A stretch of DNA of 64,000 nt from IMGVR_UViG_3300033183_000491:175551-239550; one strand, 5' to 3'; shown: positions 29,812-61,068, numbered from the stretch's first letter. Numbers and translations are program-made. Notes: generated from the sequence alone by a model not told the origin.

Positions 29812-31100
29812 ATTTTTACTCTGCTTTAATTTTTATCTACTAAACTATATATTCTAATCAATATAGCAAATTTATTAAAACAGAGCAAAATTAAAAACTT
29901 GAATTCAAACAATCTCTTTCTTTATTTTATTATATAAAATTAATTCGCTCACACACGTAAACCCTTTCAAACCATCAAATCGTTATCCAAATTAATCTCA
30001 GATTACTCTTTAATACCCAACACCATAAAACATATATAAATCTCTCAAACACTCTTCTCACACAATTCTCAAATCAATCACACCCAATGCGACGCCCTCT
30101 CAAGCGCCGCTCGCTCTATCGCCACTCGCTCTACCTTAACTCCATCAACACTCTTCATAAGGATTTGTTCAACACTAAATCATTACACAGTTTAATCTAC
30201 AATCACTCTTTTTAATCTTTTTAATTAAACACACATAAATCACAAAAACACTCTTCTCACGCAAATCTCGATTCAAATTCAACACAAATCACACAAAAGT
30301 CTCGACCTCACCCTCACCCTTCAGCAAACTCAAAAACTTTTCCAAATTTTTCTCCGGAAATTTTTTCACTTTTTCAACTTTTTACTTTTCAACTCTCAAA
30401 TACTTTTTTACCCCAAACGTCTCACGTTTCTCACACTTTTCAACACTTCTTCTCACAATCAACACTTAACACTCTCTCTCTCACACACATACACACATAT
30501 ACCACATGTATTCACTTATACTACATCTTTGGTATGAAAAGTTATCTCCGGAAAAATGTGGGAAGCGGACTTGGCCGGGCCCCAAATATACACCCAGAGA
30601 GTTATCGCTGGGGGCCTTCTGAGGGGGGCCCAGAAGGGGCGTCTTAGAGCGCCGGGGCGTAGGGATATACACGTGGCGATTGGCGATGGGGATATGGACT
30701 GTACGTGTATATTTGAAATGGATGGATTATAATAAACCATAAGGAAGGGGATTGGAACAACGGATTCCAAAGGATGGTAAGGCCAAGGCCTCCAGGACCT
30801 ACCCCGGATAAAACTGAAAGTTTGAATGACCAAAGGATCCTATTAAAAGGTGTATATTATTAATCGGTGGATTATAATAAACCATAAGGATTAAACATTG
30901 GTTTAAAACTTCAGGTCTTTGAAAACACAGGAAAACGGTTGGTTTGGGGATTGGAATGACTCTGGTCCTCGGTGTGAGAAAACCAACTGATAAAAGGCAA
31001 GTCATATTAGGTGTATATATAAATACCTTAGGTTATAATATGACCATAAGGCAAATTGGTTTTTGGCCTTAACCCCTTGGATAATGAAAGGAGGAGCTCG
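29812..31100. other. Long non-coding divergence region, strongly C/A-skewed then a GC-rich block; candidate origin/terminus region
   Basis: Gene orientation flips here; no credible ORF; repeats ACACT(T)CTTCTCAC and TCTCCGGAAAA. Confidence 0.55.
30705..31051 (+). promoter_or_regulatory. Three tandem copies of the promoter motif at the head of the right arm
   Basis: 30705-30744, 30850-30889, 31011-31051. Confidence 0.85.
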
Positions 31101-31175
31101 GTGATAGAATTGATCCCTATCATGTTAGGACTATTATTCCTCTCGATACCAATCTCGTTGATAATATATTGGTAA
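31101..31175 (+). CDS. 24-aa hydrophobic peptide
   Basis: GTG start with AGGAGG SD: MIELIPIMLGLLFLSIPISLIIYW. Confidence 0.5.
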   Translation: MIELIPIMLGLLFLSIPISLIIYW

Positions 31176-31247
31176 GTGTAATCTCTAAACAATCCTGTTA
31201 TAATAACTCGTACCTTCCATACATTTCTAAATACAAAAGGAGTTCTT

Positions 31248-31829
31248 ATGAACATTGACAATCCAACACTCATCCAACAGCTCTTCCAAGAATTCGTCTC
31301 CAATGGGGGAAAGCCTCAGATCACATCTTTCCGGACACACCTCGAAGGTCTTATGAAGAATGAGATTAAACCACTTTGTGGCTCATCACGACGCCTCGCT
31401 CCCGGAGCTCATGACTGGAGGGACGAACTTAATGCAAGGTTTGGAGGACGAGGGGCTAAGTGGCAATTTGTCTCTCTCGAGGAAATTGCTCCCACTCTTG
31501 ACGGGTTCGACGAGGAAGGCATCGATACGACTGAATACCGGATGTGGACCCAGTCGCAAGGAAAAGCTTGGATTCGTTACCTTAAGCCTCGCATCGTCAA
31601 TGGTCAGAATGTGGCGGCATTTACGGTCCATACACTGGGGTCAACGATCTTCCAGCCTCACCAACTCCACTTTATCCCGGTCGATCGTTTGGATGAGACC
31701 ATCACTCCTCTCGGGGGAACACCATTCTCCCACAAACTCGAGGAATCCATCACAATCTCTGATGAGGACCCTGTCGTCGAGGATACACTGGAGGATACCG
31801 AGGTTGACGATGATGACCTCATCGGGTAA
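31248..31829 (+). CDS. Early paralog family member 1 (GRGAKW / GKAWIR family)
   Basis: AAGGAG SD; near full-length similarity to 34587..35219. Confidence 0.8.
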   Translation: MNIDNPTLIQQLFQEFVSNGGKPQITSFRTHLEGLMKNEIKPLCGSSRRLAPGAHDWRDELNARFGGRGAKWQFVSLEEIAPTLDGFDEEGIDTTEYRMWTQSQGKAWIRYLKPRIVNGQNVAAFTVHTLGSTIFQPHQLHFIPVDRLDETITPLGGTPFSHKLEESITISDEDPVVEDTLEDTEVDDDDLIG

Positions 31830-31992
31830 GGGGTAGGAGGGGATTGGGAGGATTATCTCTCGATCGTACAAATCACTCAGACGGCGATATAATCGTTCGA
31901 TGAGTGTAACATTAAATGATCTAGTCTATAATATAGATGTAGGTCAATCGTTGAAACATTCACTCTCTCATTCAGTCTGAAAGGACAAACTC

Positions 31993-32493
31993 ATGGAAAC
32001 GATCTTCGACAAATACACAGAGATTCGCAATTACGCTGACTTCGCTCATTCGATCTACAAGATGAAAGGATTCTGCCCTGAATACCGTGAGGCTCGAAAG
32101 CCCGTCAAAGAGATCGTTGACTCTCTCGATCCTGCCCTCATTGAGAGGTTCAGGAAGGCTCAACGATGGGTCGATCAAAACCACCCACTCGTTGGCTGCA
32201 ACTCGACCTGGTCAAATTGCAAGTCGAAGGAGGACATCATGCTTGATTACCTCGGACTCAGCGAATTCCGTGTCGATCGTCTGAGAAAAGACGAAGAGTT
32301 CAAGAAGTCCGATGTTTCGTCGAAACAGATGATCGTTGATGGCTTTAGGTATTACGAGGCTCTCCTCGACAAAGAGAGGGACATCCTTTCAGCTGGTGAC
32401 GTTGACATCTCGCACACTGACCGGATGGAGGAGGCGATCAGGACAATGCTTCTTTCGTTGAGTGACTACGACGACAACCTTGACGCTCTTTGA
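31993..32493 (+). CDS. Hypothetical protein
   Basis: Promoter 31904, AAGGA SD. Confidence 0.7.
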   Translation: METIFDKYTEIRNYADFAHSIYKMKGFCPEYREARKPVKEIVDSLDPALIERFRKAQRWVDQNHPLVGCNSTWSNCKSKEDIMLDYLGLSEFRVDRLRKDEEFKKSDVSSKQMIVDGFRYYEALLDKERDILSAGDVDISHTDRMEEAIRTMLLSLSDYDDNLDAL

Positions 32494-32728
32494 GAAAAGG
32501 ATTCTGAATGTTTCTTCTAGTCGTTACAATCTTCACATTCGTTTGCTACACTTATCTTCGCATGCTTTGGCTTATGACTAAGCTTCTCCCGATCACTCTC
32601 AAGACGATGTACTTCATCTGAGCTTGACTCGATCATCACACCTCTCGATTCGTCAACTTTTCAAAAGTGTAAATTGACTTAGTCATTGATATAATCAACA
32701 AAAACATTTAAACAAACGAGGAAAACAC

Positions 32729-33028
32729 TTGAATCACACAGTTTTAACACTCATCACATCTTTCTGTCTTTCATCTCTTGCATACCACGCATCACAGGAT
32801 CAAGTTGAGATCTTGGAGTTTGACCCAATCGTTATTACTGCTCAGCACTCGACGATTGTCTTTGAAGAGACAGAGATTCGATCTGATGGTGACGCTGAAG
32901 GGATTGATTGGGATCACAATGAAGAGTTCTGGTGCGCAACGCATCCTGATGAATGTCTCATCGATACAAATCTTCAGGGAGGCGACGATGATGACGACGA
33001 TGACTCTGACGAAGAGTTTGGTTGCTAA
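32729..33028 (+). CDS. Secreted/membrane-anchored acidic protein
   Basis: TTG start, hydrophobic leader, poly-Asp tail. Confidence 0.6.
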   Translation: MNHTVLTLITSFCLSSLAYHASQDQVEILEFDPIVITAQHSTIVFEETEIRSDGDAEGIDWDHNEEFWCATHPDECLIDTNLQGGDDDDDDDSDEEFGC

Positions 33029-33113
33029 GACTTAAATTGGTTTGTGTACTTTATTTCGGACACTGATATAATAAAACGTACGGTTAATCTTCACACACTC
33101 AAAGGACATTCAA

Positions 33114-33488
33114 ATGAGAAACAACAAAAAGATCTGGACAAGAGAAGAGATCAATCAGATGATTATGCTTAATGATCACGCCGTTGAGAGAGCAATCGTT
33201 CGACTATATAAGGCACAGACTCAAGATGAAACTCTTCAGTCCAGATCAAAGCATCGCAATGGTCGAGGTTTCAACGCAGCTCACGCAAAATCTGGGACTC
33301 TCATCGCTCAGTGGATCTTGGGTCTTGATGGCAAGAATCGTCAAAGATACGAGCCTAAGAGTCTTCTACACCCAAGATGTTCAAAGCTTCTTGGTCCACG
33401 CATCAACTGTTTCAATGTGATCGCTAAAGCTAGGAAGATCGCGCTCATCCATTCATCACAACTCGTTGAGATTGCTAACAATCGTTAA
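33114..33488 (+). CDS. Hypothetical phage protein
   Basis: ND.AVERAIVRLY..QT.DE...NGRGFN; promoter 33044. Confidence 0.7.
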   Translation: MRNNKKIWTREEINQMIMLNDHAVERAIVRLYKAQTQDETLQSRSKHRNGRGFNAAHAKSGTLIAQWILGLDGKNRQRYEPKSLLHPRCSKLLGPRINCFNVIAKARKIALIHSSQLVEIANNR

Positions 33489-33501
33489 GAAAGAGGTTAT
33501 C

Positions 33502-33597
33502 ATGCTAACACTCACAGATTATGCGGCTTATGGGGGAATCATTTTAGCTTGCATCCTTGCTCTTGCCTTTATCTACGTTTTCATCGTTGAGATGTAG
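33502..33597 (+). CDS. 31-aa TM peptide
   Basis: GAGG SD; MLTLTDYAAYGGIILACILALAFIYVFIVEM. Confidence 0.55.
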   Translation: MLTLTDYAAYGGIILACILALAFIYVFIVEM

Positions 33598-33697
33598 TAA
33601 TCATAGAATTCATCGGTTTGATAGTGTATATTGAATCGTTGAATAGTATAATAACTCATCAATCATATTAATCTAATCAAACAAAGGAATCATTCAG

Positions 33698-33913
33698 ATG
33701 GATGTTAACACAAAGCCTAGAAAGCAAAGACGACGTCTAACAGATAAACCAGCTCACACAGTTTGGTCTGAAAAGCTTGACAAAGGAGGATACATTATCT
33801 TTGCAGGGATTCGAGGAACAGACGCTAAGACTATCGCTGGAGGAGCAACAAGTGAGGAAACTCTTGAGTACAACATGAGGAAAGCAAAGCTCAAGTTTGG
33901 TCTCAAACTCTAG
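33698..33913 (+). CDS. Basic hypothetical protein
   Basis: Promoter 33624, AAGGA SD. Confidence 0.65.
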   Translation: MDVNTKPRKQRRRLTDKPAHTVWSEKLDKGGYIIFAGIRGTDAKTIAGGATSEETLEYNMRKAKLKFGLKL

Positions 33914-34032
33914 GATGCTCGAGGTTTATACCTCATGCTTCGTCAATTTTCCAAAGTGTATATTTAGATATCCTATATTATAATAAACCACAAGGTCCAT
34001 TAAACTTAACTTCTTCATCTAAAGGACACAAT

Positions 34033-34254
34033 ATGAATAATATTACTAAAGACCAATACCTCAGTCTTCTTCAAGGAGACTTTCCTTCATCACTCGACGA
34101 GGACCTCAAGATGGACATTCCTCAAGATGGTGCAATTCTTCTCGTCGAGGAAGATGGTCAATACTACTTTGATGGAATTGAACTTAATGAACTAAGCGAT
34201 GAGGAGATTGAGGAATCTAAAGGATACGGCAAGATTGTCTACATTAAGATCTAA
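34033..34254 (+). CDS. Acidic hypothetical protein
   Basis: Promoter 33956, AAGGA SD. Confidence 0.65.
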   Translation: MNNITKDQYLSLLQGDFPSSLDEDLKMDIPQDGAILLVEEDGQYYFDGIELNELSDEEIEESKGYGKIVYIKI

Positions 34255-34338
34255 TAAATAAAGTGTATATGTGGTTTAGGAGGTTTATAATAAACCATAA
34301 GGTCCATTTAATAAACTTCTTCATCTAAGGGATATTAT

Positions 34339-34404
34339 TTTGAACAAAGTAAAAGCTCGCAAATCTATCCATTTGAACAAAGTAAAAGCTCGCAAATCTA
34401 TCCA
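34339..34404 (+). repeat. Perfect 33-bp tandem duplication
   Basis: TTTGAACAAAGTAAAAGCTCGCAAATCTATCCA x2. Confidence 0.95.
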
Positions 34405-34516
34405 AAAGCTACTTGACAAAGCTAAGAAAGCTCAGGCTTCTGGTAATCATAAAGAATCACTTCAACTTTTAGAAGATGCACATCAACTAAGCTTATGGAT
34501 TAAAGATAGAGGATAA
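34340..34516 (+). CDS. 58-aa basic protein with duplicated N-terminus
   Basis: TTG start after promoter 34263; MNKVKARKSIHLNKVKARKSIQ... Confidence 0.55.
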   Translation: MNKVKARKSIHLNKVKARKSIQKLLDKAKKAQASGNHKESLQLLEDAHQLSLWIKDRG

Positions 34517-34586
34517 TCAATAAAGTGTAACTTTCAAACTTTATTGGTATAATAACTCATCACCCCTTAAATAAAAGGACAACGCA

Positions 34587-35219
34587 ATGACTAACTCAAA
34601 CATTCAATCAGACAATCAAAACGAGGAGATCAACATGTCAACAATTCAAACACTTTTTCAAGAATATCTATCTGATGGCGGCAAACCACAGGTCACATCC
34701 TTTAGGGTTCACATCGAGGCTCTCATCAAGAAAGAGATTAAACCACTTTGTGGAAGATCCGGAAAGTCTGTTGGTGATAATGATTGGAGGACTCAACTCA
34801 TTGAACGCTTCAAGGGACGAGGAGCAAAATGGCAATTTGTCTCTCTCGAAGAGATTGCTCCCACTCTTGATCGGTTTGACACAGAAGGGGTTGATACAGA
34901 AGATTACAGACAATGGACTCAATCTCAAGGAAAAGCTTGGATTAGGTTTATGGCTCCCCGATTAAATAATGGAGTTAAGTCTGCTGCTTTTACAGTTCAC
35001 ACTCTTGGTTCAACAATCTATCAGCCACACCAGGTCCATTACATTGAGCTTGATAGATTGGATGAAGTTATTACACCACTTGATTCAACACCACATGCAT
35101 TAAAACTCGAGGAATCTATTCAACCAGATGAAGATCAGATGACAGACATTCAGACTGAGCTTGGACAAGAGGTTTATCCGGCTGAAATGGATTGTCTAGA
35201 TGATGATCTAGGTCTATAA
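34587..35219 (+). CDS. Early paralog family member 2
   Basis: FKGRGAKWQFVSLEEIAPTLD...QGKAWIRF; promoter 34525. Confidence 0.8.
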   Translation: MTNSNIQSDNQNEEINMSTIQTLFQEYLSDGGKPQVTSFRVHIEALIKKEIKPLCGRSGKSVGDNDWRTQLIERFKGRGAKWQFVSLEEIAPTLDRFDTEGVDTEDYRQWTQSQGKAWIRFMAPRLNNGVKSAAFTVHTLGSTIYQPHQVHYIELDRLDEVITPLDSTPHALKLEESIQPDEDQMTDIQTELGQEVYPAEMDCLDDDLGL

Positions 35220-35402
35220 AGGACTTGGGGATAATCTTCTAATCTCTTTAACTCTTCACCCTCAAAGATGACTTGATGTTGCCACCCTTGGCAGCGTCAA
35301 CTCGATAAGTGTATATTTTCTCAACATTGAGTATAATATATTATAAGGCATTTACCTTTAACATTCAATCAAAACATTCAGTCAATCGATAAGGAGAATA
35401 AT

Positions 35403-35693
35403 ATGTCAAGTAAAAACATGATCGAGGTACAATGGGAGTTTGACATCGTCACAGACGAAGAGCTTCAGCGACGACTTGGATTAACAGAAGGAGAGGTTTA
35501 CGAGATCATCGATGAAGATGATGGTGCGGAGAGGTTGAACATGATGTGTGCCCAAGAGATGGAAGTTCCGGTTTACATTAACCTTGATCTTTTCTTTGAT
35601 GATCCAAGATCAGTTGACGAAGACGAGATTACAGAAACTCTTTCAGATGAATATGGTTGGTTGGTCGATAGCTGGGAGTGGTCAAACGATTAA
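35403..35693 (+). CDS. Highly acidic hypothetical protein
   Basis: AAGGAG SD; promoter 35309; LSDEYGWLV tail. Confidence 0.7.
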   Translation: MSSKNMIEVQWEFDIVTDEELQRRLGLTEGEVYEIIDEDDGAERLNMMCAQEMEVPVYINLDLFFDDPRSVDEDEITETLSDEYGWLVDSWEWSND

Positions 35694-35800
35694 TCATTCT
35701 TATATTATCAAATGTGTATATAAGATTATGTCTGTTTATAATAAACCATAAGGTCCATTTAATCTATCCAATAACCTTTAAAAGAGAAAACAGAGATCAA

Positions 35801-36031
35801 ATGAGTGATTCTAAATATCTTAATATCTATAATGAGTGGAAGACCAGAGCAATTAAGGAAGGATTCACATTCAATCAGTTTTGGGAACATTATAATCTTT
35901 ACATTGACCCGATGAATGCACAGCCTGAAGAATGTGCAATTGCTGCCAAACTTTCTTATAGATCACTTATTGAGACAAGAAATGCAGAAACACAATTAAA
36001 CAGACAGTTGGAGACAGCACAATGGATCTAA
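35801..36031 (+). CDS. Hypothetical protein
   Basis: Start revised to ATG downstream of promoter 35714. Confidence 0.6.
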   Translation: MSDSKYLNIYNEWKTRAIKEGFTFNQFWEHYNLYIDPMNAQPEECAIAAKLSYRSLIETRNAETQLNRQLETAQWI

Positions 36032-36252
36032 TCAAATATCTTAAAGAGTTTTTATATGGAGTTGCTGCAGTTTCTGTTGTCTTTGCTTCAGCAGTCATTG
36101 CTTTAACAATCTTTATGTTCCCATTCATATTCTGTGCACTTGTTGAATACGAGACAGGAATGACTTGGCTTGGAATAACTTTTATCTTGCCGTCATATGC
36201 ATGCATGTATGTTATCGCACGACACTTTAATCTAATCGAATTCGAAGACTAA
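36022..36252 (+). CDS. Two-TM membrane protein
   Basis: Two hydrophobic segments. Confidence 0.6.
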   Translation: MDLIKYLKEFLYGVAAVSVVFASAVIALTIFMFPFIFCALVEYETGMTWLGITFILPSYACMYVIARHFNLIEFED

Positions 36253-36275
36253 TCAAATCACAAACGAGGTTCTAA

Positions 36276-36572
36276 ATGAATGATCAAGACATCACCTTTA
36301 AAACAAACTCTGATGGATCAATCCTTGCTTGGCCAGCTCCAACAGGTCCGGCAACAGAAGTTAATCGGCCTCTTGAAGAAAGATTACAATATTATTCAGC
36401 AACTCACACACTCAAAGTCGATCACAGTTTATTTGTCCCGAAGAAAGAAACTGTCGAACTAATCTTAGAAGCTTGGGATGAAGCTCAATGTAATCTCGTT
36501 GTCGATGAAGATTCTTATTATGAATATCCTATCGATCCTTCTTGGACTTACTCCGACATTTATTCATATTAA
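36276..36572 (+). CDS. Hypothetical protein
   Basis: GAGG SD. Confidence 0.6.
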   Translation: MNDQDITFKTNSDGSILAWPAPTGPATEVNRPLEERLQYYSATHTLKVDHSLFVPKKETVELILEAWDEAQCNLVVDEDSYYEYPIDPSWTYSDIYSY

Positions 36573-36594
36573 TAAATAACACGAGGTATATAAC

Positions 36595-50951: not shown

Positions 50952-50954
50952 TCT

Positions 50955-54083: not shown

Positions 54084-54156
54084 GCTGGTGTAGCTCAGTT
54101 GGTAGAGCTGGCGATTTGTAATCGTCAGGTCGGGGGTTCGAGTCCCTCCTCCAGCA
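54084..54156 (+). tRNA. tRNA-Thr(TGT)
   Basis: Cloverleaf; loop TTTGTAA; TTCGAGT; no CCA. Confidence 0.9.
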
Positions 54157-54203
54157 CTCCCGTAATTTAACAATTACACACAGACACAGAAAGAAGTTTT
54201 ATT

Positions 54204-54407: not shown

Positions 54408-54457
54408 TATTAATTAATACTATAATATGAGCATTCATTGTTCATATTATATAATAG

Positions 54458-54529
54458 GCACTAATAGCTCAGTGGTAGAGCAAGCGGCTGTTAACCGCTC
54501 GGTCCTAGGTTCAAATCCTAGTTGGTGCG
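54458..54529 (+). tRNA. tRNA-Asn(GTT)
   Basis: GCACTAA/TTGGTGC; loop CTGTTAA; no CCA. Confidence 0.92.
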
Positions 54530-54532
54530 TAA

Positions 54533-54614
54533 GCCATCATGGCGGAATAGGTAGACGCAGGAGACTTAAAATCTCCCGCCTTAGGGCGTGCCGGTTCGAT
54601 CCCGGCTGATGGTA
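54533..54614 (+). tRNA. tRNA-Leu(TAA)
   Basis: GCCATCA/TGATGGT; loop CTTAAAA; long variable arm; no CCA. Confidence 0.92.
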
Positions 54615-54617
54615 TTT

Positions 54618-54690
54618 GGATTGTTAGCTCAGTTGGTAGAGCACCGGACTCTTAATCCGTCGGTCCTGGGTTCGAGCCCCAGACAATCCA
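54618..54690 (+). tRNA. tRNA-Lys(CTT)
   Basis: GGATTGT/ACAATCC; loop CTCTTAA; discriminator A then TTC (no CCA). Confidence 0.92.
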
Positions 54691-54694
54691 TTCA

Positions 54695-54766
54695 GCACTC
54701 GTAGCTCAGCGGAAGAGCAGTGGCCTTCTAAGCCATTGGTCGTAAGTTCAAATCTTACCGAGTGTA
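54695..54766 (+). tRNA. tRNA-Arg(TCT)
   Basis: GCACTCG/CGAGTGT; loop CTTCTAA; no CCA. Confidence 0.92.
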
Positions 54767-54799
54767 CTTTTAAATTAATTCAAAAGACAAGACTTTAAC

Positions 54800-55012
54800 A
54801 TGAATAATTTTAAAAAAGTAAAAAAATATAATCTTGTTAAAATAGTAGGTAGAAATTTTCTTCCTTTTAAAGAAAAACCTTATTATTTAGTTTTAGAAAA
54901 AAAAGAGTACGATTCTATGTATAATTTTTTATTATTTTCATGCGAAGGTAAAAAATTGTGGATTAAATTTGAAAAGAAAAATCCTTTTGGTGGAATTGAT
55001 ATTTTATCTTAA
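54800..55012 (+). CDS. Small hypothetical protein (SH3-like)
   Basis: 70 aa ORF after tRNAs. Confidence 0.5.
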   Translation: MNNFKKVKKYNLVKIVGRNFLPFKEKPYYLVLEKKEYDSMYNFLLFSCEGKKLWIKFEKKNPFGGIDILS

Positions 55013-55149
55013 AAAAAGAAAGATTAATTATGAATCACCTTACTTCATACTTTAATAAGATAAAATCAAATTAAGATTTAAAATGTGTAAATTAAAAGTT
55101 TATTAATTATTATAACTTATAATAAATAACATTAATTTAAAGGTATAAA

Positions 55150-55518
55150 ATGAAACTTCCAAATAGTGCTTTAGAATTAGCAATGTCACAAGCAATGAAA
55201 TCTCCTATGCAACATATGCATGGTGCAGTTATTTGGAAAAAAGGAAAAATCATTGGAGCAGGATACAATTATCATTTAAGTGCACCAAGTCCTAATAATA
55301 GACAAGTTTCAATTCATTCAGAGAAAGATTGCTTAAATGGTCTAAGGGGAGATCAGATTTATGGAGCTGATATGTTAGCTGTTAGGGTAACAAAATCTGG
55401 ACACTTATCATCTGGTGCACCTTGTAAAGGATGTAGAAAACTTTTAAGAAGAAAAGGAATAAGAAAAGTTTTTTGGTTTGATGATGATGGAGAATTATCT
55501 TATACAAGACTTAATTAA
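55150..55518 (+). CDS. Zn-dependent cytidine/dCMP-deaminase-fold protein
   Basis: HGAVIWKKGKIIGAGYN, SIHSE, APCKGC. Confidence 0.82.
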   Translation: MKLPNSALELAMSQAMKSPMQHMHGAVIWKKGKIIGAGYNYHLSAPSPNNRQVSIHSEKDCLNGLRGDQIYGADMLAVRVTKSGHLSSGAPCKGCRKLLRRKGIRKVFWFDDDGELSYTRLN

Positions 55519-55572
55519 AATATACCTTGAAATAAACATTAAAATAACTCTGTTATCATTTAAGGCAGAAAC

Positions 55573-56532
55573 ATGAATAAACACATTAATAGAATAAAAC
55601 TTCCCTCTCAAATGCAAACTGTGATCAATGATATATTAACTTATACTAACACTAATATTTTCTTAGAAGATCAAGATTCATGGATAGCAGGAGGATTTGC
55701 TAGAATAATTAGTAATTGTTTAAATAAGAAGGCAGAGGAATCTTTTATAGATATTTGTCATTATTTTGATGAATTCGGTGATATAGATATTTTTTCAAAT
55801 AGTATTCAAAAAATTAATCATATTTCAAGTGAAGTAAAAGATAGAATAGAATTAGAACATAAATCTTTTGGAAACAAATTTAATTATTTGATGATGAATA
55901 ATATTTCTTCTAATTACTATAATTTACCTTATACTTTTAATTACGAAAATTCTTTAGCTGACTATGTAAGAGATAAAAAATTATCTGCAGTTGAAAGTAC
56001 TCATATAAACTCAAGTACGATTAAAACTCAAATTGTAGAGAAATTTATCTTTAAAGACATTAAAGAATGTTTTGATAACTTCGATATGTCTAATTCAAAA
56101 TTAGCAATTAAACTCGAGAATAAAGACTATTATTTATATTATACTGAAGATGCAGAATTCTATAACAGGAAAAATATCATAAATTTTGAAAGAGTTTCTT
56201 CACCTTACTTACCTTCTAGGCTTTGGAAATATAGCAAAAAATATGGATTCAATGTTGTTAATGACGAAAAGTTTAGATTGATTATTAAAGATTATCTTTA
56301 TAAATCTTTATCACATAACTGGCCAGATGTTTTTAATGATAAATATTGTCAAGAAGAAATGGTTAAAAGGCTTCATCGAATTACAAGACTAGAAGATCAA
56401 GATTTATGTCTTTTCTTAGGAATGTTTCAAACTGATATTATTGAAAGGCAAAAAGGACCATATGGTTTTTATACAACAGTTATAGGGTCTGAAGACTGGG
56501 CTTCAAGTGAAATCAAAGAAAGAAAACCTTAA
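55573..56532 (+). CDS. Nucleotidyltransferase (poly(A) polymerase/CCA-adding head-like)
   Basis: WIAGGFAR...GDIDIF. Confidence 0.65.
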   Translation: MNKHINRIKLPSQMQTVINDILTYTNTNIFLEDQDSWIAGGFARIISNCLNKKAEESFIDICHYFDEFGDIDIFSNSIQKINHISSEVKDRIELEHKSFGNKFNYLMMNNISSNYYNLPYTFNYENSLADYVRDKKLSAVESTHINSSTIKTQIVEKFIFKDIKECFDNFDMSNSKLAIKLENKDYYLYYTEDAEFYNRKNIINFERVSSPYLPSRLWKYSKKYGFNVVNDEKFRLIIKDYLYKSLSHNWPDVFNDKYCQEEMVKRLHRITRLEDQDLCLFLGMFQTDIIERQKGPYGFYTTVIGSEDWASSEIKERKP

Positions 56533-56746
56533 AGAATCAGATTTAATTTATTGGTATGATATCTGGAAATCTAAAGTAGAATTAGGTGTCATTACAAAAA
56601 AGAAATTTGATTACTTAGAAGTATTAAGCAATAATTCTTTACAAGTATTAAAAATAAAATATGACAATGTAGAAAAAGCATCTTGTTGCTTATCAGAGGA
56701 AGATTTTAAACTTCGCCATTTTTTAAGAAAGTTTTATAATGAGTAA
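56507..56746 (+). CDS. Small hypothetical protein
   Basis: Overlapping packed ORF. Confidence 0.5.
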   Translation: MKSKKENLKESDLIYWYDIWKSKVELGVITKKKFDYLEVLSNNSLQVLKIKYDNVEKASCCLSEEDFKLRHFLRKFYNE

Positions 56747-56936
56747 AAAATCTAAAGAAAAAGAAAAAGTCAAATTACTCAAGTGTCCTTATTGCAAAAA
56801 GATGAAGGTATCATTTCATTTTCATATATGCAAATTAACAATGCAAGAATATTACGGATGTTCAGAATGTGACAACTGGTGCACAAAATGTTCAACAGAT
56901 TGGAAAGATGGAAAACCAGTACCTAAAAAAGAATAA
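56739..56936 (+). CDS. Zn-ribbon protein
   Basis: CPYC...HIC...CSEC..WCTKC. Confidence 0.6.
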   Translation: MSKKSKEKEKVKLLKCPYCKKMKVSFHFHICKLTMQEYYGCSECDNWCTKCSTDWKDGKPVPKKE

Positions 56937-57114
56937 ACTTTACATATGGGATGATGAAAATGGAGAATCAAAAGTAATACTTCTCTTAGAGAATGTTGAC
57001 AAAACAAAATTTTCATGTATGTATAGTAATGTTAAAATATTAATTGATGATTATATAAAGACAGTTTGCTTATATGATCTTTATGAAACAAAAGGATTAA
57101 ATTATAATGTATAG
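56869..57114 (+). CDS. Small hypothetical protein
   Basis: Start uncertain. Confidence 0.45.
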   Translation: MTTGAQNVQQIGKMENQYLKKNKLYIWDDENGESKVILLLENVDKTKFSCMYSNVKILIDDYIKTVCLYDLYETKGLNYNV

Positions 57115-57520
57115 TGTAGTTGCTGGGATTGTTCATCCTCCGTTAGGAAAAGAATTAAATTTTGAATCTTATGAATTTTTTGATATTTCCGAGTCTGAGT
57201 CTGGAACTCATATTTTTAGTAATCTAATGAAAGAAGTATTAGACAACAATAAGCCAAATAATATTGTTCAAATTTTTGAAGATTTCTTTAAATCTAGAGC
57301 AATCGAATTAAATGATATAAATAAACATTATCAAAATATATTAAATGCATTCATCGAATATCATAAATGGTATTCAGGAAATAAATCATCAGCAGTAAAT
57401 TTTTATTTAGTTAAAAGAGACTTAAATGAAAATAAAGTAGTAGATGTAATTAAAACTTGGAAAGTCTATCGTGAAACAAAAACATATTATAAATCTAGAA
57501 ATAAAAAGAAAAAAGTGTAA
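57107..57520 (+). CDS. Hypothetical protein
   Basis: Packed ORF. Confidence 0.55.
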   Translation: MYSVVAGIVHPPLGKELNFESYEFFDISESESGTHIFSNLMKEVLDNNKPNNIVQIFEDFFKSRAIELNDINKHYQNILNAFIEYHKWYSGNKSSAVNFYLVKRDLNENKVVDVIKTWKVYRETKTYYKSRNKKKKV

Positions 57521-57561
57521 TTTTTTATTATTGAATTTATAATATCTAAAAAGGAGATTTA

Positions 57562-57843
57562 ATGATCAATCTACAAAAAATTTATTTTGATGGTCAAGGA
57601 TACGCAAACGCTTCTAAAAATCTAGATCCTTATTTTTCTAACGAAGAATATGTTGAAGCATCTAGATATAATTTTACACCTGTCGAAAGTATTGAGTTTA
57701 TTAATAACTCTTTTTGTAATATTACTTTGTATGATGGAAAAAAGTTTGAAGGAATCAGTATAAGTCATTTGTATACAGATATTTCTTCTAATAATTCTTT
57801 AAAAGAAGAATCAGACTTTTTAAGCCCATGTAGACTTAATTAA
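57562..57843 (+). CDS. Hypothetical protein
   Basis: Promoter 57515, AAGGAG SD. Confidence 0.6.
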   Translation: MINLQKIYFDGQGYANASKNLDPYFSNEEYVEASRYNFTPVESIEFINNSFCNITLYDGKKFEGISISHLYTDISSNNSLKEESDFLSPCRLN

Positions 57844-58037
57844 TGAATGAAACATGGATACCAGTTATTGTAGACTATATCTACACAAAAAAAGGTAAAA
57901 AAGAAAATTTATTTGCACATGCAAAACGTATAGAAAACCCTAATAACTTTAATAGAACTTATTATCAAGTTATAATACCAGAACTTGATTATATGATTTC
58001 ATCAATAGTAATTGAAAAGATTAAAAAATTTTTATGA
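57843..58037 (+). CDS. Hypothetical protein
   Basis: TAATG coupling. Confidence 0.5.
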   Translation: MNETWIPVIVDYIYTKKGKKENLFAHAKRIENPNNFNRTYYQVIIPELDYMISSIVIEKIKKFL

Positions 58038-58151
58038 GCGAAAACAATCTAAAACTAATGTCGTTATTATTTTTCTGTTTAACATTTATTCCTGTAGCAT
58101 TTGTTTTCACAGGAACATTTATTACTCTAGTGTTAAGTTTATTTAATTAAT

Positions 58152-58391
58152 ATGAAAAACGAAGATATAAAAATATTCTTTAAAAGAATTAAGTATTTAA
58201 GGCTTACATCTGAAGAGAGAACAAGAATGTTAAATAAGATTCAAGTTAGAGGATGTAATAAGAAAAACAAGATAATGACTTATAAAGAATTCACCAGTCT
58301 TTTAAAGAACAATAAAGGAAGGATTAATTCTCTTGTTTTAGGTCCTAAATGGAACAGGTTAGTTTTTGTAGATATTAATATAAAGGTTTAA
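58152..58391 (+). CDS. Basic hypothetical protein
   Basis: 79 aa ORF. Confidence 0.5.
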   Translation: MKNEDIKIFFKRIKYLRLTSEERTRMLNKIQVRGCNKKNKIMTYKEFTSLLKNNKGRINSLVLGPKWNRLVFVDINIKV

Positions 58392-58392
58392 T

Positions 58393-58671
58393 ATGGACAA
58401 CAAAGAAGAATACGATGATTCTATTGAAGAAATAATCAAAGAATCTATGGATAACAATCCTATAATGATTATTTCAGTTGACAAAGATGGATCTGTTGCT
58501 TTAATGACAACAGGTAATATAACAAAAATACAAAATGATGTTTGTACTAAAATGCTTATAACAGTCGGAAGTCATTCAATAGTATTATCAGTTGTTTTAT
58601 GGTTAGAAATCGTTTTTGAAAAATTTCTATACAATTGCTCAGAATTCATTAAAAATTTTAAGTCTCATTAG
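58393..58671 (+). CDS. Hypothetical protein
   Basis: AAGG SD. Confidence 0.55.
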   Translation: MDNKEEYDDSIEEIIKESMDNNPIMIISVDKDGSVALMTTGNITKIQNDVCTKMLITVGSHSIVLSVVLWLEIVFEKFLYNCSEFIKNFKSH

Positions 58672-58717
58672 TGTAATTAATAATTTATTAGTTTATAATA
58701 AGGTATAAGGAGAGATT

Positions 58718-59275
58718 ATGTCGAAAAATTCATTTAAAAAAGAAATCCGTGAAAGATATAATGGACGTGGCAATGCTTGGGTTAGAGTAGAAAAAGATAC
58801 TCCATCATATTCTAAAATAATCGATAATCTTGTTAGTATTGGGCAAGAAAAATCAGAATATGTAAATCACATTGAAAGAGAAGGTTATGCTTGGATAAGA
58901 TTTCTAAAACCAGAAGGGACTTCAGAAAATCCTGAATGTAAATTTGAAATTAGATATAGAGGTTCAAAAGAAATTCATCTAGATTCATTTATAAACTTTA
59001 GCGATGAAATCTCAAGGCAATTTAAGTTTCTTGGTAATACTCCTTTTAAGCTTCAACTTGAAACTGAGCCTGACAAGCGGAAATCTAAAGTTATAAATAA
59101 AAACTCTTTAGGAAAGACAAAGACTCAAGACAAAAAAGAAGAGACATTATCTATTAACGAAGAAAAAGAAATAAAGATTATTAAAGAAGCTGCCTTAACA
59201 CAAGCTTCTAGTGAAGAACTTGAAGAGTGGTATGAATTCTTAAAAATAAATAACCTTTACGAAGAAAATGTTTAA
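58718..59275 (+). CDS. Early paralog family member 4 (most divergent)
   Basis: YNGRGNAWVRV...GYAWIRF...FEIRYRGS...LGNTPFKLQLE; promoter 58671. Confidence 0.72.
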   Translation: MSKNSFKKEIRERYNGRGNAWVRVEKDTPSYSKIIDNLVSIGQEKSEYVNHIEREGYAWIRFLKPEGTSENPECKFEIRYRGSKEIHLDSFINFSDEISRQFKFLGNTPFKLQLETEPDKRKSKVINKNSLGKTKTQDKKEETLSINEEKEIKIIKEAALTQASSEELEEWYEFLKINNLYEENV

Positions 59276-59536
59276 TGATTTTATTTTTCTTATGGTTAAC
59301 ATTAGTAATTCTATTTACAGAACATGATCAATCGTATTTTAAAACTCTAGCAATAATAACAACAAACTTTATCTTTTTTATATGTTCGATTTAATTATCA
59401 TTACAATTTTCGTTTTAATTTTTAGCTATCTTCATAGCTTTCATAACAATAGAAAAAGAAGTGATATATACTTTATTTTTCTAATCACAGAAATAACTTT
59501 AATTTACAGCTATCTTAGCATTAAGTAAGGAAAACA

Positions 59537-59872
59537 ATGAGTACAAAATGGGGTGAAGTTAGAAATGGAGATTCTGTATATTTCAAAGGAAAAACAGGAA
59601 CAGGATCAGTTGTTAAAACAAAAAGTCATGGAAGATATTTCATGCCAGCGAAAGTTGGAATGAGAATTAAAGGTGAAATTAAACCAATTATTAAAGATGA
59701 AAGATTTGTTTATTCAGGGTCAAAAGTCCAATCATACGAAGGAACTGATAGGATTGTTAAATGCTTAATCACAAGAGTATCAGACAATACAATCGTAGCT
59801 ATTAGTGAAAAACAATTTATGAGATACTTTTATAAAACTAATCAAAGTAATCTTGGAGGACCAAATATTTAA
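59537..59872 (+). CDS. Hypothetical protein
   Basis: AAGGA SD. Confidence 0.6.
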   Translation: MSTKWGEVRNGDSVYFKGKTGTGSVVKTKSHGRYFMPAKVGMRIKGEIKPIIKDERFVYSGSKVQSYEGTDRIVKCLITRVSDNTIVAISEKQFMRYFYKTNQSNLGGPNI

Positions 59873-60145
59873 ATGAATAATGATCTTGTGAAATATTTCT
59901 ATTTAACTTGCTTAGTTATTTTTTTTAACATGTCATGTGTTCCAAAAAACCAGTATGACATTCTCTTGAAAGAAAAAAGAGATCTTGAAGAGAGAATTGA
60001 TTATCACAGAACAGTTCAAAGAGAATATGACAATCTAGATTTTAAATATAGAAATCTTATGTTTGATTTAGATATCTGTAATAACAAGATAAGATCTTTA
60101 GATACAAAACTTATTGAATGTTTAAATACGAAAGAATGTAAATAA
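59873..60145 (+). CDS. Putative lipoprotein with coiled coil
   Basis: FNMSCVPK..Y pattern. Confidence 0.55.
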   Translation: MNNDLVKYFYLTCLVIFFNMSCVPKNQYDILLKEKRDLEERIDYHRTVQREYDNLDFKYRNLMFDLDICNNKIRSLDTKLIECLNTKECK

Positions 60146-60415
60146 TTGGATAATTCTGATATTAAACCAGGTGATATGTTATGGGTAACTTTAAAAGGAC
60201 CTGATCAAAATTATGGTTATGGGGAAGTTATTGAAGTCTGGAAAGATGATGAATCAGGAGAAATTTATTATGATTTTCATTGCTTAGTAAATGGTGGTCA
60301 AAGAGTAGGTTGCGTTTCTAATATTATTGAGAAACCTAATATGAGAATGGAGAGTAAATTACTTCAATCAAGAAAAGAATACAAAGAAGTAATGAAAGAA
60401 AAATATAAGTTTTAG
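60146..60415 (+). CDS. SH3-like hypothetical protein
   Basis: IKPGDMLWV...YGEVIEV. Confidence 0.55.
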   Translation: MDNSDIKPGDMLWVTLKGPDQNYGYGEVIEVWKDDESGEIYYDFHCLVNGGQRVGCVSNIIEKPNMRMESKLLQSRKEYKEVMKEKYKF

Positions 60416-60474
60416 AATTCTTTTTCAGATTTATTAATATACTATTATAACTTACAATCTTCGAGGAATAGAAA

Positions 60475-60759
60475 ATGACAAAATGTAAAAGATGCACATC
60501 ATGTACAGCAGGTATTATGTGTCAATGTGGAAAATCAAAAGATATGAAAAATTCAAACGTAGATCACCCTACACACTATTTAAAAGATTCTGGTCATGAA
60601 GTTATTGACGTCATTAAGGCATGGAAATTAAATTTTCATTTAGGAAATGCAATTAAATATATTGCTCGTGCAGGGTTGAAAAACCCAGACAAGAAAATAG
60701 AAGATTTAGAAAAAGCAATCTGGTATATTAAAGACGAAATAAATTCAAGCAAAAACTAA
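60475..60759 (+). CDS. DUF3310-family protein (putative nucleotide kinase)
   Basis: VDHPTHY...GNAIKYIARAG.K...EDLEKAIWYI. Confidence 0.88.
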   Translation: MTKCKRCTSCTAGIMCQCGKSKDMKNSNVDHPTHYLKDSGHEVIDVIKAWKLNFHLGNAIKYIARAGLKNPDKKIEDLEKAIWYIKDEINSSKN

Positions 60760-60805
60760 TATTTAGTCTCTTACACATATATAAAAGTAAACGTAGGAGA
60801 CGAAA

Positions 60806-61021
60806 ATGATAGTTATTAAAAAAATAATATGGGACTTTTCAGGTACAGAGTTTGAGGATTGTGATTATGAAGAATCAAGGAAAATTGCAGTCTTGCCTAA
60901 AAAACTTAAAATCAAAGAAGAAGATTTAGATTCAGACGCAGAAATCGAAGATGTTATTGAATTCTTAGAAGAAACTTACAACTTTTCTGTCGAGTCAATA
61001 ATAACAGACCAAGATGACTAA
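60806..61021 (+). CDS. Acidic hypothetical protein
   Basis: AGGAG SD; resembles 35403..35693. Confidence 0.6.
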   Translation: MIVIKKIIWDFSGTEFEDCDYEESRKIAVLPKKLKIKEEDLDSDAEIEDVIEFLEETYNFSVESIITDQDD

Positions 61022-61068
61022 TGTGTATTTAAATTTATTTTTGATTATAATATCCTATAGGAGATATT

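What the first reader, a model, noticed from the sequence alone, without database searches (positions are those of the whole stretch)
30705..61051. A 30-kb region tiled by ~30 copies of a non-canonical promoter (GTGTAW-N17-TATAAT-AAACCATAAGG)
Seen: 29 sites have GTGTA(A/T/C), exactly 17 nt, then TATAAT. All are on the + strand and right of 30.7 kb, nearly all sit just upstream of an ORF, and many carry a conserved AAACCA(T/C)AAGG(TCC) downstream. Established: TATAAT with 17-nt spacing is sigma70 geometry, but the -35 here is not TTGACA; T4-type phages have repeated early-promoter cassettes in hyperplastic regions. Inference: this is a phage-specific early regulon in which each small gene travels with its own promoter, read either by a host sigma with unusual -35 preference or by a phage factor.
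Basis: partly seen in the sequence, partly recalled or inferred. Interest (0 to 1): 0.75.

Follow-up and report, generated by a model that had tools for sequence, protein, structure and literature searches.

The report
Phage promoter class with GTGTA -35 box
An uncultured 240-kb marine phage drives its accessory-gene arm from about 33 copies of a promoter that has a normal -10 box but an unusual, invariant GTGTA -35 box, and the phage also encodes a sigma factor split into two proteins whose -35-reading piece is the most likely reader.

Summary
There are 30 exact GTGTAH-N17-TATAAT sites, all on the + strand between 30705 and 61051, where 0.07 are expected by chance. The window is the last 64 kb of a complete 239,550-bp, 29% GC marine virus record.

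Genome-wide the motif is always co-oriented with the genes. It is absent from the 80-205 kb block that holds the capsid and other large-protein genes. It is the only motif found at the -35 position. Upstream of genes there are 29 exact GTGTA boxes and only one with a single mismatch.

The same promoter occurs in related contigs whose local GC runs from 29% to 53%. All of the 14 large contigs examined were chosen because they encode an 87-aa protein: a zinc-finger-like domain plus sigma region 4.2, with an invariant, non-canonical recognition helix. In this phage that protein is window 8653-8916.

Its partner is a 249-aa sigma truncated exactly before region 4.2. The partner gene sits behind a GTGTA promoter. 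A complex model scores 0.68 against 0.00 for the best control.

CAYAAGG is a Shine-Dalgarno-like (SD-like) element at a fixed distance from the -10 box. There is roughly one promoter per two genes, not one per gene. No start-site data could be obtained.

The parts
30705..31204 (+). Four tandem promoters (GTGTA starts at 30705, 30850, 31011, 31176) at the left end of the rightward arm. The first three have no ORF behind them. The first two are 88% identical over 41 nt.
   Evidence: The 5' part of the first transcript, including a GGAAC..GTTCC hairpin, is conserved in four related contigs.
31904..38323 (+). Thirteen promoters (starts 31904, 32667, 33044, 33624, 33956, 34263, 34525, 35309, 35714, 36929, 37156, 37834, 38295). 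This is about one per 500 bp, each in the short gap before a small ORF.
   Evidence: Exact matches. Distance from the -10 box to the start codon is 33-65 nt. None of the three ORFs tested here has a Pfam or PHROG match.
40062..50354 (+). Eleven promoters. Nine are exact (40969, 41976, 43202, 44046, 45481, 46469, 47935, 49742, 50326). Two have an imperfect -10 box (40062 with AATAAT at spacing 18; 40431 with CATAAT).
   Evidence: They head the RNA ligase gene (44124-45296, phrog_562), ORFs of unknown function and tRNA-Ile (47334-47407).
52251..61051 (+). Five promoters (52251, 57515, 58671 and 61023 exact; 55085 with TATTAT). In three of them (57515, 58671, 61023) the leader is only 17-18 nt and the element after the -10 box is the gene's own Shine-Dalgarno sequence.
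   Evidence: The 52251 promoter heads the adenosylhomocysteinase gene and, further on, the tRNA cluster at 54084-54767. Orthologous promoters exist in related contigs.
30734..30750 (+). Example of the conserved element after the -10 box: A-W-A-Y-C-A-Y-A-A-G-G (T-C-C). AAGG starts 7 nt after TATAAT. This is probably the start site plus a 5'-terminal SD-like sequence.
   Evidence: Position matrix. Fixed offset in 45 of 91 sites against 2.7% background; it is the true SD in 15 sites and a second SD follows in 35.
8653..8916 (+). Gene for the 87-aa protein ('p87'): an N-terminal Cys/His cluster plus the sigma70 region 4.2 helix-turn-helix. It is the proposed reader of the GTGTAW box. It is a lone + strand gene, divergent from PhoH.
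   Evidence: Pfam Sigma70_r4 model positions 18-50. phrog_351 positions 693-726 abut positions 478-692 of the 249-aa sigma. Invariant C13, H17, C24, C29, C42 and TRMRVCQIEK. Complex model 0.68 against 0.00 for the best control.
29812..30704 (.). A 900-bp non-coding, G-poor junction from which the two gene arms diverge. It holds degenerate direct repeats about 200 bp apart, then a GC-rich palindromic stretch (30540-30700) immediately before the first promoter.
   Evidence: GC-rich GCCCCGGGGC-type palindromes lie in the same place in three relatives.
30705..63500 (+). The whole rightward arm: about 63-74 co-directional genes, 7 tRNA genes and about 33 promoters of this class. The first 4 kb are 42% GC against 29% for the genome.
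   Evidence: Strand blocks; composition; tRNAs. About 45% of its ORFs are shared, roughly in order, with two relatives.

Best explanation
These sites are genuine two-block promoters of one phage-specific class: wAw-GTGTAW-17 nt-TATAAT-A. There are about 45 per genome.

In the window they head the transcription units of the 33-kb rightward accessory arm, at about one promoter per two genes. On the other arm, outside the window, they head purine and thymidylate metabolism genes, UvdE, a PolA-like gene, gp32, AAA ATPases and the phage's own sigma gene.

The most likely reader is host core RNA polymerase carrying the phage's two-piece sigma:
- A 249-aa protein (regions 1.2, 2, 3 and 4.1) is almost identical to primary sigmas in region 2 and would read TATAAT.
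- The 87-aa zinc-finger plus region 4.2 protein (window 8653-8916) would read GTGTAW. Its recognition helix reads TRMRVCQ where primary sigmas read TRERIRQ.

Because the 249-aa sigma gene lies behind such a promoter, the circuit would be self-reinforcing. The first round is probably started by weak reading by host sigma, since the sites have a perfect -10 box, 17-nt spacing and the central T and G of the -35 hexamer.

The conserved CAYAAGG is the start of the RNA and is SD-like. In short leaders it is the gene's real SD. In long, CA-rich leaders it sits at the 5' end ahead of a second SD, probably as a ribosome docking or mRNA-stabilising element.

Shown: the motif statistics, geometry, conservation, the split sigma and its altered helix, and their co-occurrence. 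Inferred: who reads the promoters, the timing, the start site and the RNA-level role.
For: 1. The promoter class is real and strand-consistent.
2. GTGTA is the only motif enriched at the -35 position in the genome: 42 genes against 4.8 expected, with no second class.
3. The -35 box is all-or-none upstream of genes: 29 exact and 1 with one mismatch. That fits a dedicated reader better than a tolerant housekeeping sigma.
4. Canonical TTGACA-type promoters are not enriched: 81 found against 84.6 expected.
5. The sigma is split exactly between regions 4.1 and 4.2. Pfam r4 model positions 2-18 fall on one protein and 18-50 on the other. phrog_351 positions 478-692 and 693-726 abut.
6. The truncation is conserved. 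In the listing, which shows only the best 120 clusters, all are 247-254 aa. In relatives at 36-39% identity, two of the three open frames are 239 and 260 aa. The third is open for 321 codons before any start is chosen. All three end just after region 4.1.
7. p87's helix TRMR(V/I)CQIE is invariant in the 17 aligned homologues and in the 14 large contigs examined. Among the hits inspected it occurs only in small stand-alone proteins, whereas nearly all full-length sigmas among them keep TRERIRQIE (two carry other variants). The changes fall at the positions equivalent to E. coli E585 and R588, which I recall as -35 base-contact positions.
8. A complex model of the two proteins scores 0.68 against 0.00 for the best of 3 controls. 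In calibration that mark was reached by 51 of 78 solved complexes and 2 of 108 mismatched pairs. The interface covers sigma residues 208-248.
9. The same GTGTAA-N17-TATAAT occurs in phage contigs that carry p87 homologues, over very different base composition. One has 22 forward and 0 reverse sites, against 0 control matches, with a 53% GC arm.
10. The sigma gene has its own GTGTAA promoter in three lineages (with 92, 60).
11. No gp55 or gp45 homologue was found.
12. Split sigmas that drive their own promoter in a positive loop have a precedent in Tn916 Sig7-8 (bioRxiv 10.64898/2026.10.01.756105).
Against: - There is no transcript or start-site evidence. No RNA run was listed.
- A phage-encoded reader needs a starter, and that step is assumed, not shown.
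- The p87 gene itself is not behind a GTGTA promoter. It has only a -10-like or TATAAATA-like box, so the two halves may be made at different times.
- The two genes are 158 kb apart, unlike known split-sigma operons.
- The helix and the box are both invariant, so there is co-occurrence but no covariation.
- Some large contigs with p87 homologues show few or no exact sites (G006, G008, G009, G011, G012). They are 17-82% complete.
- T4-type phages show that a lineage-specific -35 variant can be read by host sigma70.
- The complex model may simply be rebuilding the known sigma region 4 fold from memory.
Confidence: 0.55

Rival explanations
1. Host primary sigma holoenzyme alone reads these promoters, as in T4 early transcription. 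GTGTAW would be a lineage-specific -35 variant. The phage's split sigma would serve a later class, for example -10-only or TATAAATA-like promoters in front of structural genes.
For: - The cascade logic fits: the sigma gene itself lies behind a GTGTA promoter.
- The regulon covers an accessory arm, tRNAs and DNA-metabolism genes, which are typical early or delayed-early content.
- The sites resemble T4 early promoters: a conserved G and T-A in the -35 box, G-rich bases just upstream of -12, and A-rich bases upstream.
- The -10 box and spacing are perfect, and two of the three strongest -35 bases are retained.
- TATAAT-only and TATAAATA boxes lie upstream of the capsid gene and other large genes: 11 against 3.9 expected.
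Against: - GTGTAA matches TTGACA at only 3 of 6 positions, yet it is invariant.
- It is conserved in phages from 29% to 53% local GC, which probably have different hosts.
- Under this model a conserved, specialised -35-reading helix would have no -35 motif to read, because no second bipartite class exists.
- The composite motif is essentially absent from 596 Gb of bacterial genomes, with 2 matches.
Confidence: 0.28
2. The GTGTAW box is bound by an accessory factor acting as an activator or appropriator on host sigma holoenzyme, in the manner of T4 MotA/AsiA. That factor could be p87 on its own or another phage protein, possibly delivered with the DNA. Alternatively, p87 is a repressor that shuts these promoters off late.
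For: - p87 has a stand-alone DNA-binding helix-turn-helix plus a Cys/His domain that sigmas lack.
- Its own gene carries a late-looking box. That fits either packaging for the next infection or late shut-off.
- Stand-alone region 4.2 proteins of this type are numerous.
Against: - The box lies exactly where a -35 hexamer lies, at a strict 17-nt spacing. The MotA box is centred at -30 with 11-13 nt spacing.
- p87 continues the truncated sigma residue for residue in the sigma profile.
- p87 is modelled as docking on the sigma's region 4.1.
- No AsiA-like or MotA-like protein was looked for successfully.
Confidence: 0.12
3. The sites are not promoters. They are a dispersed repeat with another role, such as recombination or packaging signals, or remnants of a mobile cassette.
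For: The first two copies are near-duplicates including their spacer. The arm shows gene turnover between relatives.
Against: - Only the two boxes and the start-proximal element are conserved; the 17-nt spacers are not.
- Spacing is fixed at 17.
- Orientation always matches the genes.
- The sites lie 17-67 nt before start codons, in the only non-coding gaps.
- They are conserved at orthologous positions in relatives.
Confidence: 0.03

Closest known systems
T4-type early promoters (T4, RB69, RB49, 44RR, Aeh1; Nolan et al. 2006, PMC1524935)
   Same: - Dozens of near-identical strong promoters in front of small, often novel ORFs and tRNA genes.
- A TATAAT -10 box, G/T-rich bases just upstream of it, and A-rich bases upstream of the -35 box.
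- A lineage-specific -35 box that begins with G and contains T-A.
- The phage has a T4-like capsid, portal and gp32.
   Different: - The -35 box is GTGTAW at spacing 17, not GTTTAC/GTTGAC at -36 to -31. That is 3 of 6 matches to TTGACA, against 5 of 6 for T4.
- There is an extra conserved CAYAAGG after the -10 box.
- The phage shows no gp55 or gp45 homologue, has a DnaE-type polymerase, and encodes a primary-like sigma. T4 early promoters are read by unmodified host sigma70.
Two-subunit (split) sigma factors: B. subtilis SigO-RsoA, Tn916 Sig7-8, T4 gp55/gp33, SPO1 gp33/gp34 (as reviewed in bioRxiv 10.64898/2026.10.01.756105)
   Same: Promoter recognition is divided between two polypeptides, one carrying region 2 and one carrying the -35-reading part. 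As with Sig7-8, the sigma gene lies behind its own promoter class, which gives a positive loop.
   Different: - Here a primary-like (group 1/2) sigma is cut inside region 4, between 4.1 and 4.2, not between regions 2 and 4.
- The small piece has an added Cys/His domain.
- The two genes are 158 kb apart, on opposite strands, and have different promoter types.
- Nothing has been shown biochemically.
Phage sigma cascades such as SPO1 gp28 (recalled from my own knowledge, not checked here)
   Same: A phage-encoded sigma redirects host core polymerase to a large set of phage promoters with a distinctive -35 box.
   Different: SPO1 middle promoters differ from host promoters in both boxes, and the sigma is a single chain. 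Here the -10 box is canonical and only the -35 box is new.
5'-proximal SD-like mRNA stabilisers (STAB-SD of cryIIIA, Agaisse and Lereclus 1996, cited in PMC3997798)
   Same: An SD-like sequence near the 5' end of a long leader, not followed by a start codon, upstream of the true ribosome-binding site.
   Different: Here it sits at a fixed distance from the -10 box, is shared by about half of one promoter class, and doubles as the real SD where leaders are short. Any effect on stability is untested.

Membership tests
sigma70-type bipartite promoter | -10 hexamer close to TATAAT | tested here: met
   Exact TATAAT in 30 window sites. Three more sites have one mismatch.
sigma70-type bipartite promoter | Second element 17 +/- 1 bp upstream | tested here: met
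   Spacing is 17 in all 30 window sites and 5 on the - strand. Spacing 18 occurs in 6, and none at 14-16 or 19.
sigma70-type bipartite promoter | -35 hexamer close to TTGACA | tested here: not met
   The box is GTGTAW, 3 of 6 matches, and invariant. TTGACA-type sites are not enriched.
sigma70-type bipartite promoter | Transcription starts 5-8 nt after the -10 box | not testable with these tools
   No RNA run was listed for this sequence.
T4-type early promoter | -35 box GTTTAC (or GTTGAC) at -36 to -31 | tested here: not met
   The box is GTGTAW, one position closer to the -10 box. It shares G, T, T and A with GTTTAC only if the register is shifted.
T4-type early promoter | A-rich UP-like tract upstream of -35 and G/T-rich bases upstream of -12 | tested here: inconclusive
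   A is found 22 of 30 times two bases before the box. At -15 there is G in 15 and T in 11 of 30 sites; at -14, G in 10 of 30. Further upstream there is only a weak AAGATT enrichment, 14 against 4.7 expected.
T4-type early promoter | Located before early genes, novel small ORFs and tRNA genes of a T4-like phage | tested here: inconclusive
   Location is as expected. The phage has a T4-like capsid and portal, but no gp55 or gp45 was found and it has a DnaE-type polymerase. Timing was not tested.
Split (two-subunit) sigma factor | Two polypeptides that together supply the -10-reading and -35-reading regions | tested here: met
   The 249-aa protein has regions 1.2, 2, 3 and 4.1. The 87-aa protein has region 4.2. 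Their profile coordinates abut.
Split (two-subunit) sigma factor | The two proteins bind each other and RNA polymerase | tested here: inconclusive
   The complex model scores 0.68 against 0.00 for the best control. In calibration the mark was reached by 51 of 78 solved complexes and 2 of 108 mismatched pairs. This is a model only, and the fold may be recalled from intact sigmas. Binding to polymerase was not tested.
Split (two-subunit) sigma factor | Both pieces are required for transcription from a cognate promoter | not testable with these tools
   This needs in vitro transcription or genetics.
5' SD-like leader element (STAB-SD type) | SD-like sequence near the 5' end, not serving a start codon, upstream of the true SD | tested here: met
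   AAGG lies at a fixed offset after the -10 box in 53 of 91 sites. In 35 of these a second SD and the start codon lie more than 12 nt further on.
5' SD-like leader element (STAB-SD type) | Raises mRNA stability or ribosome recruitment | not testable with these tools
   This needs reporter or half-life assays.

The most novel reading that the evidence does not exclude
A widespread clade of uncultured marine phages carries a natural orthogonal transcription pair. One member is a primary-like sigma cut inside region 4. Its -35-reading helix-turn-helix is a separate zinc-finger protein with a re-specified helix (TRMRVCQ). The other member is a matching promoter class (GTGTAW-17-TATAAT) that keeps the host-type -10 box. 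Under this reading the phage could redirect core polymerase simply by supplying a new -35 reader. Because the two halves have different promoter types, timing could be set by when the small piece appears, or by whether it is delivered with the virion.
Probability: 0.45. Interest if true: 0.78.

Novelty: new variant of a known kind. Interest (0 to 1): 0.62.

Why it matters
If the pairing holds, this is a compact natural example of how promoter specificity can be re-coded by exchanging only region 4.2 of a sigma factor. It comes with about 45 natural target promoters per genome and hundreds of metagenomic homologues.

That would be useful for understanding -35 recognition. It would also help annotate transcription units in abundant uncultured marine phages, and it could supply an orthogonal sigma/promoter part for synthetic biology.

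It also makes a concrete open question testable: how large phages without their own polymerase, and without T4's gp55 system, schedule their genes.

Tried and rejected
- **Nucleotide searches against cultured phages.** They found nothing. Protein searches give only distant relatives: Bacillus phage G helicase at 33% and Rhodothermus RM378 capsid at 34%. No annotated relative could be used.
- **Host identification.** It failed. The composite motif gave 2 matches in bacterial genomes. NCBI copies of the sigma come from a Tara metagenome assembly. SD-like sequences precede 62% of genes. I take that as an argument against a Bacteroidota host, but it does not name one. A possible link to the 'moraphage' lineage (PMC12619734) was not established.
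- **RNA evidence.** No RNA run was listed, and only DNA metagenome runs hold the sequence. I did not use read laying, because contigs cannot show start sites.
- **Rfam.** It found only the tRNAs.
- **Terminators.** Intrinsic terminators are not enriched between the units: 5 found against 7.1 expected.
- **A 2-aminoadenine (Z) genome as a reason for a special sigma.** Rejected. The PurA-like protein scores 310 bits on PurA models and 125 on PurZ, whose cut-off is 300.
- **The 84-aa ORF overlapping the sigma stop codon.** It looked like a helix-turn-helix by eye. It has no family match, no profile match to p87, and its model has no meaningful structural neighbour. I do not count it as a sigma piece.
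- **A second -35 motif for the split sigma.** None was found.
- **Upstream elements.** AAGATT and a CGTCAAC-like word are weak and not fixed in position.

Full report
**Context.** The window is bases 175,551-239,550 of a single 239,550-bp IMG/VR virus record. The record has direct terminal repeats, is rated 100% complete and is 29% GC. DNA runs that hold the sequence are seawater, estuary and marine metagenomes. The phage has a T4-type major capsid protein, portal and terminase. It also has a gp32-like protein, two copies of the thymidylate synthase ThyX, PhoH, GroEL, a helicase and an RNA ligase. Its replicative polymerase is a DnaE-type Pol III alpha. I found no match to T4 gp55 or gp45, either by single sequence or by PHROG profile. 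No cultured phage is close. Genes form two arms that diverge from a 900-bp non-coding junction at window 29812-30704. About 205 kb runs leftward and about 33 kb runs rightward.

**The observation.** The pattern GTGTAH-N17-TATAAT occurs 30 times in the window, always on the + strand, from 30705 to 61051. Shuffles give a mean of 0.07. In the whole genome there are 30 sites on the + strand, all in this arm, and 5 on the - strand. Spacing is 17, with a few at 18 and no other values. A weight matrix adds three window sites with one mismatch in the -10 box, plus about ten leftward sites between 6.6 and 79 kb. Every site is co-oriented with the local genes. None lies in the 80-205 kb block that holds the capsid and other large-protein genes.

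**Geometry.** The consensus is wAw-GTGTAWAT, a non-conserved spacer with G-rich bases at -15/-14, TATAAT, then A-W-A-Y-C-A-Y-A-A-G-G. The sites fill the short gaps between ORFs, often starting within 0-30 nt of the previous stop codon. The -10 box ends 17-67 nt before the next start codon. Canonical TTGACA-type promoters and intrinsic terminators are at chance level in the arm.

**How tight the motif is.**
- GTGTA is the only word enriched at the -35 position anywhere in the genome. 42 genes have it 16-18 nt upstream of a -10-like hexamer, against 4.8 expected, and no second class appears.
- Among TATAAT boxes upstream of genes, 29 have exact GTGTA at spacing 17 and only one has a single mismatch. 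That all-or-none pattern represents about 10 bits in five bases. It is unlike the loose -35 boxes that housekeeping sigmas tolerate.

**What the regulon contains.**
- In the window it contains mostly ORFs with no family match. It also holds a pentapeptide-repeat protein, an RNA ligase, adenosylhomocysteinase and seven tRNA genes.
- On the other arm the same promoters precede PurA-like, PurB-like and GMP-reductase-like genes. They also precede UvdE, both ThyX copies, a methyltransferase, a PolA-like gene, gp32, two AAA ATPases and a sigma factor gene.
- There are about 33 promoters for 63-74 called genes in the arm, so 'one promoter per gene' is too strong.
- About 45% of the arm's ORFs are shared, roughly in order, with two relatives. 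Among orthologue pairs where at least one copy has a promoter directly upstream, both have one in 7 or 8 cases and only one has it in 8 cases.

**Conservation elsewhere.** An exact scan of IMG/VR with the promoter plus its downstream element found 20 stretches in 14 contigs. In five of these contigs the bare pattern occurs 4 to 32 times, against 0-1 control matches, and with the same two-arm layout. In 596 Gb of bacterial genomes the composite pattern has 2 matches. It is therefore a phage feature, not a host one.

**The phage sigma is split.**
- A 249-aa ORF outside the window (genome 25962-26711, - strand) has sigma70 regions 1.2, 2 and 3. It ends at RLRFGINNNDD, the end of region 4.1.
- Its region 2 is nearly identical to primary sigmas (NLRLVISIAKKY, FSTYAxWWIxQA), as shown by the alignments to solved SigA and RpoD chains.
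- An 87-aa ORF in the window (8653-8916, +) has a Cys/His cluster followed by TLQEIGDLFGITRMRVCQIEK. This aligns to the region 4.2 helix-turn-helix of solved sigma region 4 structures.
- Against one sigma profile the two proteins cover positions 478-692 and 693-726. Against Pfam Sigma70_r4 they cover positions 2-18 and 18-50.
- The truncated form is not a defect of this genome. In the listing, which shows only the best 120 clusters, all are 247-254 aa. Relatives at 36-39% identity also end just after region 4.1.
- The small protein has 85 homologous clusters. The 17 aligned share invariant C13, H17, C24, C29, C42 and TRMRVCQIEK.
- In an exhaustive HMMER search, the hits inspected carry TRMR(V/I)CQIE only in small stand-alone proteins. 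Nearly all the full-length sigmas among them keep TRERIRQIE.
- The two substitutions fall at the positions equivalent to E. coli E585 and R588. From my own knowledge of the genetics and of the Taq region 4/DNA structure, these contact -35 bases.
- A complex model scores 0.68 against 0.00 for the best of three controls. In calibration that mark was reached by 51 of 78 solved complexes and 2 of 108 mismatched pairs. The interface covers sigma residues 208-248. The model supports binding but does not show it, and it may be reconstructing a known fold.

**Linking sigma and promoter.**
- A sigma with a host-like region 2 and a re-specified region 4.2 should read a promoter with a canonical -10 box, canonical spacing and a new -35 box. 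That is exactly this class, and it is the only bipartite class in the genome.
- I examined 14 large contigs chosen for carrying p87 homologues. Eleven have exact GTGTA-N18-TATAAT sites, against 0-1 control matches.
- One of them has 22 forward and 0 reverse sites in an arm of 53% GC, with GC-rich spacers but the same two boxes. Its downstream element differs (GAAGATAAGGAG).
- All 14 keep the same recognition helix. Conservation of an odd -35 box across such different compositions is easier to explain by a conserved phage reader than by different hosts' sigmas.
- The sigma gene lies behind its own GTGTAA promoter in this phage, in the 211-kb relative, and in a lineage at 64% identity (with 92, 60). 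That gives a self-reinforcing loop like the one reported for Tn916 Sig7-8.

**Weak points.**
- There are no transcript data.
- A phage-encoded reader needs a starter. I assume weak use by host sigma, which is plausible given a perfect -10 box and 3 of 6 matches in the -35 hexamer, but this is not shown.
- The p87 gene has only a -10-like or TATAAATA-like box, so the two halves may appear at different times.
- The helix and the box are both invariant, so there is no covariation.
- Several p87-bearing contigs have few exact sites, though all are incomplete.
- T4-like phages show that host sigma70 can read a lineage-specific -35 variant.
- I therefore give the split-sigma reading 0.55, host sigma alone 0.28, an accessory-factor model 0.12 and 'not promoters' 0.03.

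**The element after the -10 box.**
- AAGG begins exactly 7 nt after TATAAT in 45 of 91 sites, at 8 or 9 nt in 8 more, against a background of 2.7%. A start at the A of CA would give RNAs that begin AUAAGG.
- In 15 sites this is the gene's own Shine-Dalgarno sequence, in a leader of about 17-20 nt.
- In 35 sites a CA-rich leader and a second SD follow.
- I read it as a 5'-terminal SD-like element, comparable to STAB-SD (cited in PMC3997798). A DNA-level role in promoter escape or pausing is not excluded.

**Other things seen.**
- The first three promoters have no ORF. Their transcript starts with a hairpin conserved in four relatives.
- The junction holds degenerate repeats about 200 bp apart and GC-rich palindromes.
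- The first 4 kb of the arm are 42% GC.
- TATAAATA lies upstream of the capsid gene and ten other genes, against 3.9 expected.
- One canonical TTGACA-N16-TATAAT lies at window 18386 on the - strand.

**Verdict.** It is a promoter regulon related in kind to T4 early promoters, but with a different, invariant -35 box. It is probably tied to a previously undescribed split, primary-like sigma. I found no paper that describes either.

Noticed in passing
window 8653-8916 (+); partner gene outside the window at genome 25962-26711 (-): The phage sigma factor is split. A 249-aa protein ends after region 4.1. An 87-aa Cys/His plus region 4.2 protein is encoded 158 kb away on the other strand. Both forms are conserved in many marine metagenome clusters.
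   Followed up: yes
window 29812-30704: A 900-bp G-poor non-coding junction between the two gene arms. It has degenerate direct repeats about 200 bp apart (CACTCTTCTCAC-type) and a GC-rich palindromic stretch just before the first promoter. Similar GCCCCGGGGC palindromes occur in relatives. It may be an origin, a packaging site or a physical end.
   Followed up: partly
window 30734-31175: The first three promoters have no ORF behind them. The first transcript begins with a conserved AAGGAGGG..GGAAC-loop-GTTCC hairpin shared by four related contigs. They may be small RNAs or simply tandem promoters.
   Followed up: partly
window 30000-34000: The first 4 kb of the rightward arm are 42% GC in a 29% GC genome. 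In a distant relative the whole equivalent arm is 53% GC.
   Followed up: no
window 47334-47407, 51845-51918, 54084-54767: Seven tRNA genes (Ile-TAT, Met, Thr, Asn, Leu-TAA, Lys-CTT, Arg-TCT) lie inside the transcription units of this promoter class.
   Followed up: partly
window 52304-53599, 39435-40061, 44124-45296: The arm carries adenosylhomocysteinase (probably starting at TTG 52304), a pentapeptide-repeat protein and a T4 Rnl1-like RNA ligase.
   Followed up: partly
genome 10040-13631 (L027), outside the window: PurB-like, PurA-like and GMP-reductase-like genes lie in a row. Promoters of this class precede the GMP-reductase-like gene and its neighbours. The PurA-like protein scores as PurA, not PurZ, so a 2-aminoadenine genome is not indicated. 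The cluster looks like a route from G to A nucleotides for an AT-rich genome.
   Followed up: partly
genome 25718-25972 (L028:5718-5972, -), outside the window: An 84-aa ORF with a TTG start overlaps the sigma stop codon by 11 nt, and a small gene follows the sigma gene in relatives too. It has no family match and no structural neighbour. Its role is unknown.
   Followed up: partly
genome 116475-118283 and ten other genes, mostly outside the window: TATAAATA, the T4 late-promoter word, lies within 60 nt upstream of the capsid gene and other large genes (11 against 3.9 expected). No gp55 or gp45 homologue was found. The replicative polymerase is DnaE-type, although the capsid is T4-like.
   Followed up: partly
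window 18386-18359 (- strand): The only perfect canonical TTGACA-N16-TATAAT in the genome lies in a 56-nt divergent gap before the 201-aa gene at 17718-18323. It is a candidate true host-type promoter.
   Followed up: no
window 35270-35300, 38265-38290, 33920-33945: Strong hairpins without a U-tract, followed by a (C/T)GTCAAC-like word, lie about 10-15 nt upstream of some promoters. Similar CGTCGTC or CATCAC words occur in relatives. They may be processing sites or atypical terminators.
   Followed up: partly
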